From: Octopus vulgaris
Lineage: Eukaryota
Reading direction: 5' to 3'
Assembly (NCBI GenBank): GCA_951406725.2
Contig: OX597826.1
Span: 60,036,001 to 60,098,000, forward strand
Length of the DNA: 62,000 bases
Part shown: one piece after another, positions 35,187-35,710 of the stretch
Layout of the letters: every line of letters begins with the position of its first letter
How positions within the stretch are numbered: the first letter of the stretch is position 1
Notes under the pieces: generated by a model
The model's input: only the letters and a program-made list of their open reading frames with translations
Told to the model about the DNA's origin: nothing
Database searches by the model: none
Made by a program: the position numbers and the translations under genes

Positions 35187-35710
35187 TAATACACATATGA
35201 GAGAGAATCCACTAAAGTGGACGCCCTTACGCTAAAGAGAGATCCACATGAGTCGCAACCACTAAAAATTGTTCTCATTTGAATATAACTATGAATATAA
35301 TAGGCCGTACTGCTCGTATTTTTGACCTCGTGTTAATATATGGCGTGCAGTTCGACAAATTATATTTTTGACGGACTCCACTGATGACCTGCAAATTAAT
35401 TGTGTAAGTAAAATTGCATAATTTATTAACAGTGAAACAATAGTAAGGGGATTAACCTATATTTTTGTTATTTATCATTTATCCAGCTCGCTTACGTTCA
35501 TAGTGTGCTAAGTTTTTCTTAAGAACAAGTTTTAGTGGTTGAGACTCATGCGGATCTCTCTTTAGCGTAAGGGCGTCCACTTTAGTGGATTCTCTCTCAT
35601 ATGTGTATTAATAATATTTACTGAATCTCAGTTTTTTATGCGCTAAACCACTGGTGTTAAATTGATGTTATTAAATTAATATCCAATTTTTTCATCCTCA
35701 TTTTGATTAT
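35187..35710 (+). mobile_element. Inverted-repeat/tail family, copy 3 (89-bp arms, 246-bp spacer, tail)
   Basis: Arms at 35187-35275 and 35522-35610 differ at 3 positions; tail at about 35611-35710; (TA)n on both sides. Confidence 0.92.
35376..35450 (+). ncRNA. Type I hammerhead-like motif with extended stem II, in the spacer of copy 3
   Basis: CUGAUGA 35381-87; CUG/CAG basal pairs; 10-bp hairpin aattgtgtaa/ttgcataatt; GAAAC-AAUA-GUA 35434-45; stem I cucca/agggg. Mismatches at the base of stems I and II. Confidence 0.55.

What the first reader, a model, noticed from the sequence alone, without database searches (positions are those of the whole stretch)
35187..35710. Candidate undescribed element: long inverted arms, internal hammerhead, one-sided tail, (TA)n target
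The architecture is (TA)n, 89-bp arm, 246-bp spacer, inverted arm (3 mismatches), about 100-bp tail, (TA)n. The tail lies outside the inverted repeat and is conserved in all three copies (17.9, 23.7 and 35.2 kb), which is unlike a TIR transposon or MITE. The spacer holds CUGAUGA...GAAAC-AAUA-GUA with an extended stem II containing a 10-bp hairpin. Inverted pseudo-LTRs, hammerheads and microsatellite-associated insertion are known for Penelope-like elements. I infer a non-autonomous, retrozyme-like family mobilised by a Penelope-type RT, possibly through a self-cleaved or circular RNA. Three copies in 62 kb suggests high abundance. Novelty could not be checked.
Basis: partly seen in the sequence, partly recalled or inferred. 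Interest (0 to 1): 0.8.

Follow-up and report, generated by a model that had tools for sequence, protein, structure and literature searches.

The report
Hairpin-plus-tail transposon family in (TA)n repeats
This is one of three old copies of a small non-coding mobile element that lands in TA-repeat DNA; it looks like the insertions already described for Penelope-like retroelements, and its "hammerhead ribozyme" is unproven and seen in one copy only.

Summary
The sequence features are real. At 35187-35710 there are two 89-nt inverted arms with 3 mismatches, a 246-nt spacer and a 100-nt one-sided tail, with (TA)n on both sides.

The architecture is not shared by all three copies. Only the outer ~55 nt of the right arm plus the tail (~160 nt, 77-79% identity) recurs at 17.9 and 23.7 kb. 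Copy 2 has 58-nt arms and a 24-nt loop. Copy 1 has no left arm. The spacer holding the CUGAUGA...GAAAC motif is unique in the window.

The hammerhead is not established:
- No Rfam hammerhead model gives any score, even on a 99-nt stretch.
- The first pair of helix II (positions 10.1/11.1) is a C.U mismatch.
- A loose hand-made descriptor is matched more often than chance predicts, so a decayed ribozyme relic is not excluded.

The best reading is a non-autonomous (TA)n-homing family driven by its 3' module. All its structural traits are already described for Penelope-like (Naiad-type) insertions: inverted partial copy, one-sided tail, 5' loss, no poly(A), TA-microsatellite target. Rolling-circle (Helentron-type) elements or partners of a microsatellite-specific LINE remain possible.

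The source genome, Dfam and Repbase could not be searched. I rate it a new member of a known kind, of modest interest.

The parts
35163..35188 (.). Left (TA)n flank of copy 3 (GATATATATATATATGCATATATATA)
35187..35275 (+). Copy 3, left arm: inverted duplicate of the right arm
   Evidence: 89 nt, 96.6% complementary to 35522-35610. 96 nt at 94% by the repeat finder.
35276..35521 (+). Copy 3, 246-nt spacer, unique in the window
   Evidence: No other match by blastn-short, blastn or nhmmer.
35376..35450 (+). Hammerhead-like motif inside the spacer. Helix I is 35376-35379 / 35447-35450, CUGAUGA is 35381-35387, and helix II is a 46-nt irregular hairpin with a C.U mismatch at 10.1/11.1. GAAA is 35434-35437, helix III is AC/GU plus an AAUA loop, and the putative cleavage site follows A35445.
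   Evidence: The letters are present. It passes only a relaxed descriptor. No Rfam hammerhead match. The hammerhead-compatible fold is -12.7 against an MFE of -17.6 kcal/mol.
35522..35610 (+). Copy 3, right arm. Its outer ~55 nt (35555-35610) belong to the module shared by all copies.
35611..35710 (+). Copy 3, 3' tail. It is conserved in all three copies and holds two small conserved stem-loops: ACTGA-ATC-TCAGT followed by a T run, and AAATTGAT...ATCCAATTT about 27 nt from the 3' end.
35709..35735 (.). Right (TA)n flank of copy 3
23723..23962 (+). Copy 2, short form: left arm 23723-23780, loop 23781-23804, right arm 23805-23862, tail 23863-23962. A long (TA)n lies to the left (23673-23720) and a degenerate (TA/TG)n to the right.
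   Evidence: Arms 58 nt, 93%. DNA fold -59.3 kcal/mol, z = -13.9. Profile match E 1e-43.
17895..18062 (+). Copy 1: right arm (outer part, 17904-17961) plus tail (17962-18062), with no left arm. Homology with the copy-2 loop may reach back to about 17868.
   Evidence: Profile match E 3e-44. No inverted partner. Anchored alignment to the copy-2 loop gives p~0.015.

Best explanation
This is a family of short, non-coding, non-autonomous mobile elements that integrate into (TA)n microsatellites.

The conserved, and therefore probably recognised, part is the 3' module of about 160 nt. It consists of the outer right arm plus a ~100-nt tail that carries two small stem-loops. The 5' part is variable. 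In two of three copies it is an inverted duplicate of the right arm, giving a 58- or 96-bp hairpin. In the third copy it is missing.

The mechanism I think most likely is copying out from the 3' module by target-primed reverse transcription, with the enzyme supplied in trans by a Penelope-like element of the (TA)n-targeting Naiad type. Its inferred steps are:
- A GIY-YIG nick is made in AT-rich DNA.
- cDNA synthesis starts at one of two internal start sites. The stretch between them is the one-sided 'tail'.
- Extension is often incomplete, which gives loss of the 5' side.
- An inverted partial copy arises because both target strands can be nicked and extended.

The composite hairpin form then itself served as a source copy. 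The hammerhead-like motif is at best a relic carried in the long form. It is not a working part of the family as seen here.

Shown: the anatomy, the three copies, the (TA)n association, the concerted arms and the absence of coding capacity. Inferred: every step of the mechanism and the identity of the partner.
For: Family and shared module:
- Three copies share a 160-nt 3' module. They are about equally distant from one another (77-80%).
- The arms inside a copy are 93-97% complementary. 24 aligned columns differ between copies 2 and 3 but stay complementary within each copy.
- No ORF longer than 42 aa overlaps the element.

Asymmetry:
- The real 3' end shows no significant similarity to the arm terminus, so the element has no terminal inverted repeat.
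- There is no poly(A).
- Both ends of copies 2 and 3 and the 3' end of copy 1 lie in (TA)n.
- Copy 1 keeps the 3' module and has lost the 5' side.

Literature:
- Naiad PLEs prefer (TA)n and are heavily 5'-truncated. They often carry an inverted 5'-truncated copy that creates inverted repeats, and a tail that is often present at one end only. They lack canonical hammerheads (PMC8557442).
- A purified PLE protein nicks AT-rich DNA and extends both strands. It starts reverse transcription at two internal sites in a stem-loop, and the stretch between them is the genomic tail (PMC11167929).
- Non-autonomous PLE-dependent families that share only the 3' end with their partner are described.
Against: - No PLE coding sequence (RT, GIY-YIG) was found in the window. 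The only TE proteins seen are a Tc5/pogo remnant and a LINE-like fragment.
- The described PLE tail is 30-40 bp and optional. Here it is ~100 nt and present in 3 of 3 copies.
- Copy 1 appears to keep the copy-2-type loop (p~0.015). The hairpin junction therefore looks inherited rather than made anew at each insertion.
- Concerted arms could equally reflect selection on a DNA hairpin.
- (TA)n targeting is not specific to PLEs. Mutator-like SaTar/Micron elements also home to it, and some endonuclease-type LINEs target microsatellites.
- Only three copies were available and no genome-wide data.
Confidence: 0.42

Rival explanations
1. A rolling-circle (Helitron/Helentron-type) non-autonomous element, HINE-like. 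It would have a 5' inverted-repeat module, a variable centre, a 3' copy of the repeat followed by a palindrome near the 3' end, and it would be copied as single-stranded DNA by a Rep/helicase supplied in trans.
For: - The topology matches HINEs. In those, a 5' subTIR lies 2-4 nt from the 5' end, the 3' subTIR lies well inside the 3' end and is followed by a palindrome 8-35 bp from the terminus, and the centre is highly variable. They have no TSD and are abundant in molluscs (PMC4067079; PMC7492417).
- Here the left arm starts at the 5' end and the right arm ends ~100 nt before the 3' end.
- A conserved hairpin, AAATTGAT..ATCCAATTT, ends ~27 nt from the 3' end.
- The centre is 24 nt in one copy and 246 nt in another.
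- An inherited hairpin with co-evolving arms suits a DNA-structure signal.
Against: - HINE subTIRs are 11-13 bp, not 58-96 bp.
- HINEs insert at TT in T-rich DNA and carry T runs at their ends. Here the flanks are (TA)n.
- There are no Helitron 5'-TC / 3'-CTRR termini in either orientation consistently (read).
- No Rep/helicase remnant is in the window.
Confidence: 0.2
2. A SINE-like element, or the bare 3' end of a LINE, mobilised by a microsatellite-specific non-LTR retrotransposon with a restriction-like endonuclease (R4/Dong, NeSL or HERO type). The reverse transcriptase recognises the structured 3' module.
For: - The 3' module is conserved and carries stem-loops. There is no poly(A), the 5' side is lost in copy 1, and the target is a microsatellite.
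- Several RLE-LINE clades are microsatellite-specific (PMC4640811).
- If the window comes from an octopus, which is only my impression from memory, Dong-R4 LINEs are among the most active families there (PMC13282606).
Against: - Long inverted duplications and a one-sided tail are not a described feature of these LINEs.
- I found no report of (TA)n as their target in the papers read.
- The LINE-like fragment in the window (58.7 kb) shows no similarity to the module.
Confidence: 0.13
3. A cut-and-paste foldback MITE with long terminal inverted repeats that homes to (TA)n. Examples are the Mutator-like SaTar/Micron/MuTAnT elements or a TA-target Tc1/mariner/pogo MITE. The 'tail' would be an accreted or internal segment.
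For: - (TA)n-flanked non-autonomous elements of 380-1700 bp with 40-250-bp TIRs are documented in plants (PMC5907723).
- A Tc5/pogo transposase remnant, a TA-target superfamily, is in the window.
- The arms are long and well matched.
Against: - The right arm is not terminal. A conserved 100-nt tail follows it in all three copies, and its end does not resemble the arm terminus.
- Copy 1 has the right arm and tail but no left arm.
- The arm termini resemble no TIR known to me (from memory only).
- SaTar elements are known from plants.
Confidence: 0.08
4. One reading: a retrozyme-like element whose internal hammerhead self-cleaves the transcript, possibly giving a circular RNA that a Penelope-type RT copies back.
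For: - Core letters and three helices can be drawn. Helix III of 2 bp plus a tetraloop and a short helix I are usual for invertebrate and PLE hammerheads. A mismatch at the base of helix II occurs in a natural axolotl variant (PMC7229834; PMC4209133).
- The relaxed descriptor is expected only 0.01-0.03 times per window, yet it hits twice.
- The motif is on the same strand as the tail, 165-265 nt upstream of the 3' end. That is roughly where a PLE pLTR ribozyme would lie.
Against: - No Rfam hammerhead family matches at E<=10, even on 99 nt where 8-bit hits are listed.
- The strict descriptor gives 0 hits. The descriptor was relaxed after the fact to fit this motif.
- There is a C.U mismatch instead of G10.1-C11.1, and loop 3 is not palindromic.
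- Helix II is a 46-nt irregular hairpin.
- The MFE fold pairs the core, and the hammerhead-compatible fold is 4.9 kcal/mol worse.
- The motif exists in one copy only, and the element is not in tandem, so one site cannot release a circle.
- A ~96-bp RNA hairpin would dominate folding.
Confidence: 0.08

Closest known systems
Penelope-like element insertions, Naiad clade (Craig et al. 2021, PMC8557442), and the in vitro PLE mechanism (PMC11167929)
   Same: Preference for (TA)n, loss of the 5' side, an inverted partial copy that creates inverted repeats, an extension ('tail') at one end only, no poly(A), no canonical hammerhead in Naiads, and non-autonomous relatives that share only the 3' end.
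   Different: The tail here is ~100 nt and present in 3 of 3 copies, against 30-40 bp and optional. No RT/GIY-YIG partner was seen. The hairpin junction seems inherited between copies 1 and 2. There is no tandem pseudo-LTR arrangement.
Animal non-LTR retrozymes (Cervera and de la Pena 2020, PMC7229834; Li et al. 2026 preprint 10.64898/2026.07.22.740005)
   Same: Short, AT-rich and non-coding, with a proposed dependence on PLEs and a hammerhead-like string in one copy.
   Different: Retrozymes are head-to-tail tandem repeats of 150-450 bp, each with a bona fide type I hammerhead. Here the copies are dispersed and single, with inverted arms. The motif is in one copy only and is not recognised by hammerhead models.
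Helentron-associated interspersed elements (HINE / DINE-1; PMC4067079, oyster Cg_HINE PMC7492417)
   Same: An asymmetric layout of 5' repeat, variable centre and 3' repeat, followed by extra sequence with a palindrome near the 3' end. No TSD, association with microsatellites, common in molluscs.
   Different: The subTIRs of HINEs are 11-13 bp, against 58-96 bp here. Their target is TT in T-rich DNA, not (TA)n. Their 3' repeat lies 38-60 bp from the end, against ~100 bp here.
Microsatellite-targeted MULE derivatives of plants (SaTar, Micron, MuTAnT, TAFTA; PMC5907723, PMC4486113)
   Same: Small non-autonomous elements with long inverted repeats, flanked on both sides by (TA)n.
   Different: Those have inverted repeats at both true termini and 9-10-bp TSDs when outside microsatellites. 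Here one end carries a 100-nt non-repeated tail. They are known from plants.
PLE minimal hammerheads (Cervera and de la Pena 2014, PMC4209133)
   Same: Short helix I (4 bp), enlarged helix II, very short helix III, and an unpaired base next to A9.
   Different: The conserved G10.1-C11.1 pair is missing and loop 3 is not palindromic. There is no second copy nearby for the dimeric form, and no family of covarying copies.

Membership tests
Hammerhead ribozyme (type I, canonical or PLE-minimal) | Match to a curated covariance model (Rfam Hammerhead_1, _3, _II, HH9, HH10) | tested here: not met
   No hammerhead family at gathering score on the window. None at E<=10 on 701 nt or on 99 nt, where hits down to 8 bits were listed.
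Hammerhead ribozyme (type I, canonical or PLE-minimal) | Conserved core CUGANGA ... GAAA ... UH with three helices around it | tested here: inconclusive
   The core letters are present, with helix I of 4 bp and helix III of 2 bp plus a tetraloop. Helix II starts with a C.U mismatch, so only a relaxed descriptor passes. Chance expectation is 0.01-0.03 per window, but the descriptor was fitted after the fact.
Hammerhead ribozyme (type I, canonical or PLE-minimal) | G10.1-C11.1 pair and a palindromic 15.2-16.2 / loop 3 (PMC4209133) | tested here: not met
   10.1/11.1 is C.U and the first real pair is C-G. CAAUAG is not palindromic (sequence; criteria).
Hammerhead ribozyme (type I, canonical or PLE-minimal) | Covariation of the helices across family members | not testable with these tools
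   The spacer has no second copy in the window, and the source genome is not in the searchable collections.
Hammerhead ribozyme (type I, canonical or PLE-minimal) | Self-cleavage | not testable with these tools
   This needs an in vitro transcription assay.
Animal non-LTR retrozyme | Head-to-tail tandem repeats of 150-450 bp | tested here: not met
   Tandem Repeats Finder finds no such array at any of the three copies. The copies are dispersed and single.
Animal non-LTR retrozyme | A bona fide type I hammerhead in every unit | tested here: not met
   Copies 1 and 2 have no such motif. Copy 3 has only the unrecognised motif.
Penelope-like element insertion (Naiad type) or PLE-dependent non-autonomous element | Insertion bias for (TA)n microsatellites | tested here: met
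   Five of six ends abut (TA)n against a background of 6-13%.
Penelope-like element insertion (Naiad type) or PLE-dependent non-autonomous element | Inverted 5'-truncated partial copy that forms inverted repeats, and 5' truncation | tested here: inconclusive
   Inverted arms of 58 and 96 nt in two copies and none in the third fit this. However, the copy 1 / copy 2 junction looks inherited.
Penelope-like element insertion (Naiad type) or PLE-dependent non-autonomous element | Tail extension (30-40 bp, optional) at one end only | tested here: inconclusive
   The tail is one-sided, but it is ~100 nt and present in 3 of 3 copies.
Penelope-like element insertion (Naiad type) or PLE-dependent non-autonomous element | 3' end shared with an element that encodes RT plus a GIY-YIG endonuclease | not testable with these tools
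Helentron / HINE | 11-13-bp subterminal inverted repeats and a palindrome after the 3' repeat | tested here: inconclusive
   The order of parts is the same and a conserved hairpin lies ~27 nt from the 3' end. The repeats, however, are 58-96 nt.
Helentron / HINE | Insertion at TT in T-rich DNA, with T runs at the ends | tested here: not met
   The flanks are (TA)n and there are no terminal T runs.
Helitron | 5'-TC and 3'-CTRR termini with a hairpin just upstream of the 3' end, inserted into an AT dinucleotide | tested here: not met
   An AT target is available in (TA)n, but no consistent TC/CTRR termini are present in either orientation in the three copies (sequences).
TIR transposon / MITE (including (TA)n-homing MULE derivatives) | Inverted repeats at both true termini | tested here: not met
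   The right arm is followed by a conserved 100-nt tail. The tail end versus the arm end gives p = 0.11-0.64. Copy 1 lacks the left arm.

The most novel reading that the evidence does not exclude
This would be a distinct class of (TA)n-homing 'hairpin-plus-tail' elements. Their long arms would be kept complementary by selection or by the copying mechanism itself. Their long form would carry a divergent, non-tandem type I hammerhead, with a C.U mismatch at 10.1/11.1 and a 46-nt helix II. Such elements would be a link between PLE pseudo-LTR ribozymes and retrozymes. A second relic of the same ribozyme type may lie at 24306-24381 on the minus strand.
Probability: 0.08. Interest if true: 0.55.

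Novelty: new member of a known kind. Interest (0 to 1): 0.25.

Why it matters
If the family is PLE-dependent, it gives a compact natural substrate for a poorly understood retrotransposition pathway. At 160 nt, the 3' module is small enough to test which RNA features a PLE enzyme recognises and where it starts copying.

The long perfect hairpins (58-96 bp) are likely sources of small RNAs and of local DNA instability in a genome packed with microsatellites.

As it stands, the finding mainly shows that a striking single-copy architecture dissolves into a known insertion pattern once the other copies are compared. It also shows that a hammerhead-like string needs family-level support before it is believed.

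Tried and rejected
- **External copies.** Exact-pattern scans of viral, metagenome and prokaryote-genome collections with two family patterns gave nothing. The single metagenome match (L001) is a chance hit in a coding region.
- **Reaching the source genome through proteins.** A SINE-derived ORF and a LINE-like ORF found no homologue at all. More copies could therefore not be fetched.
- **Literal sequence strings in the paper library.** None found.
- **Tail as a hidden right TIR or a direct repeat of the arm end.** Not significant (p 0.11-0.64).
- **Tail as a third, degenerate arm copy.** There is a 9-nt complement with two covarying columns, but single-copy tests are weak (p 0.03-0.28). Kept only as a note.
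- **Homology of copy 1's upstream 320 nt, or of the second hammerhead-like site (24.3 kb, minus strand), with the spacer or the family.** None.
- **Segmental duplication as the source of the three copies.** Rejected. Only ~160 nt are shared and the flanks are unrelated.
- **tRNA or other known RNA origin.** No ARAGORN or Rfam hit.
- **Canonical Helitron termini.** Absent in both orientations.

Full report
**What the window is.** The window is AT-rich (35% GC) DNA, densely packed with microsatellites. It has no tRNA gene and no Rfam family at gathering score. It carries SINE-like repeats, a Tc5/pogo transposase remnant and a LINE-like fragment. This looks like an invertebrate nuclear genome. 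From memory it resembles a cephalopod, but that is a lead and was not tested.

**Checking the observation.** At 35187-35710 the described anatomy is exact:
- The arms are 35187-35275 and 35522-35610, 89 nt with 3 mismatches. With flanking TA-rich bases they reach 96 nt at 94%.
- The spacer is 246 nt and the tail 100 nt, with (TA)n on both sides.
- It is the only long, high-identity, non-microsatellite inverted repeat within 3 kb in the whole window.

The claim that the architecture recurs three times does not hold:
- BLAST and a profile built from the copies show that only the outer ~55 nt of the right arm plus the tail are shared. This is about 160 nt at 77-79% identity, found at 17904-18060 and 23806-23962. 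An exact three-block pattern from the tail matches these three places and is never matched in shuffles.
- Copy 2 (23723-23962) is a 240-nt short form with 58-nt arms (93%), a 24-nt loop and the tail.
- Copy 1 has the right arm and tail but no left arm.
- The 246-nt spacer occurs once.

**Relations between the copies.** The arms are 93-97% complementary within a copy, but the copies differ by more than 20%.
- In a joint alignment, 24 columns differ between copies 2 and 3 while staying complementary within each copy. The arms therefore evolve in concert, or are far younger than the split between the copies.
- The 24-nt loop of copy 2 is homologous to the inner part of copy 3's left arm in that orientation (p~0.015).
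- Copy 1 appears to retain that same loop next to its right arm (anchored alignment p~0.015; real-sequence control 0.018).
- This suggests that the hairpin junction was inherited by copies 1 and 2 and that copy 1 lost its left arm. It does not fit a hairpin made anew at each insertion.
- The tail holds two small conserved stem-loops. It also has a 9-nt complement to the arm with two covarying columns. Three sequences are too few to make that complement significant.

**(TA)n association.** Between 6% and 13% of the window lies in or within 10 nt of a (TA)n run. Both ends of copies 2 and 3 and the 3' end of copy 1 abut one. This is more than chance would give, but the sample is small. The exact ends and any target duplication cannot be read inside a dinucleotide repeat.

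**The hammerhead claim.** The letters are there: CUGAUGA at 35381, GAAAC-AAUA-GUA at 35434-35445, and a predicted 10-bp hairpin in between. Evidence against a working hammerhead:
- No Rfam hammerhead model reports anything. This holds at gathering score, at E<=10 on 701 nt, and on a 99-nt stretch where hits as weak as 8 bits are listed.
- Position 10.1/11.1 is a C.U mismatch, and loop 3 is not palindromic. PLE hammerheads conserve G10.1-C11.1 and have a palindromic 15.2-16.2 / loop 3 (PMC4209133).
- The hammerhead-compatible secondary structure is 4.9 kcal/mol worse than the minimum free energy fold, which pairs part of the core.
- In the full element, a ~96-bp stem dominates folding.
- The motif sits in a segment that no other copy has.
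- The element is not in tandem, so a single site could not release a circular RNA. Animal retrozymes are defined by tandem units (PMC7229834).

Evidence for it:
- A descriptor of my own, relaxed to allow the 10.1/11.1 mismatch, is expected only 0.01-0.03 times per window. It hits twice in the real sequence and not at all in the reversed or complemented sequence.
- The second hit (24306-24381, minus strand) is in unique DNA. It is not homologous to the first or to the family, and it is also ignored by Rfam.
- Natural type I variants have a 2-bp helix III with a tetraloop, and at least one has a mismatch at the base of helix II.

The descriptor was fitted after the fact to the first hit. I therefore treat the motif as unproven, possibly a decayed relic, with about 0.1-0.3 probability of ribozyme ancestry and much less of function.

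**What the element is.** It is non-coding, with no ORF above 42 aa. It is asymmetric, repeated and (TA)n-associated, and its 3' module is its best conserved part. That points to a non-autonomous mobile element copied from its 3' end.

The right arm is never terminal, the true 3' end does not resemble the arm terminus, and copy 1 lacks the left arm.

Every structural trait is already described for Penelope-like insertions, Naiads in particular:
- preference for (TA)n;
- strong 5' truncation;
- an adjacent inverted 5'-truncated copy that creates inverted repeats;
- a tail often present at one end only;
- absence of canonical hammerheads (PMC8557442).

The in vitro work on a PLE protein explains the tail as the stretch between two internal reverse-transcription start sites. 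It also shows nicking of AT-rich DNA with extension of both strands (PMC11167929).

The differences here are a longer and constant tail, no partner in view, and an apparently inherited hairpin junction.

**Rivals.**
- *HINE/Helentron-type rolling-circle elements.* They share the order of parts and are common in molluscs. They have 11-13-bp repeats and a TT target.
- *Partners of microsatellite-specific RLE-LINEs.* These would explain the 3' module and the target but not the inverted arms.
- *(TA)n-homing MULE derivatives.* These show that the target alone is not diagnostic.

**Novelty.** Whether this particular family is catalogued could not be checked. Dfam and Repbase are not available, and neither the DNA collections nor the protein collections contain this genome. 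I rate it a new member of a known kind, with modest interest. A small residual chance remains that the long form carries a divergent hammerhead.

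Noticed in passing
window 24306-24381, minus strand: A second match to my relaxed type I hammerhead descriptor: CUGACGA, a 55-nt helix II with a U.C mismatch at its base, then GAAAC-AUCU-GUA. It lies in unique DNA about 350 nt right of copy 2. It is not homologous to the first motif or to the family, and it has no Rfam hammerhead score. 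Two hits against 0.01-0.03 expected remain unexplained.
   Followed up: partly
window 9017-9767, plus strand: A remnant of a Tc5/pogo-type transposase. ORF 9017-9358 has an HTH_Tnp_Tc5 domain (Pfam E 1.8e-5). The next ORF, 9507-9767, looks like the DDE part, but that is from memory and has no Pfam hit.
   Followed up: partly
window 58722-59021, plus strand: A 100-aa ORF that resembles the C-terminal part of a LINE reverse transcriptase, from memory. It has no Pfam hit and no homologue in the protein collection. A (TA)n array follows about 0.9 kb downstream.
   Followed up: partly
window 34826-35165 and 35897-36247; other copies e.g. 12920-13297, 25099-25519, 28793-29009, 30318-30660, 39707-39892: An abundant SINE-like family with 10 or more copies at 65-83% identity. 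Two copies in inverted orientation bracket copy 3, and one end of this family regularly abuts microsatellites. The (TA)n arrays used as targets may be seeded by it.
   Followed up: partly
window 10356-10723 and 42131-42886: Two local tandem duplications of repeat-derived sequence: a 185-nt unit x2 at 91%, and a 379-nt unit x2 at 88% containing a tRNA-like stretch. ARAGORN calls no tRNA there.
   Followed up: no
window 24466-24626 and 27407-27567: A 161-nt repeat at 96% identity, much younger than the other repeats around it.
   Followed up: no
window 19600-22200 and 25900-26430: Long tri- and hexanucleotide arrays (TGG/TGA/ATG/ATA units) that produce long low-complexity ORFs in several frames. 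They are probably not coding.
   Followed up: no
window 17910-17918 / 17991-17999, 23812-23820 / 23891-23899, 35559-35567 / 35640-35648 (approximate): A 9-nt stretch of the right arm (TCTAGCRTA) is complementary to a stretch of the tail (TAYGCTAGA) in all three copies, with two columns changing on both sides. It could be a conserved long-range pairing or a relic of a third arm copy.
   Followed up: partly
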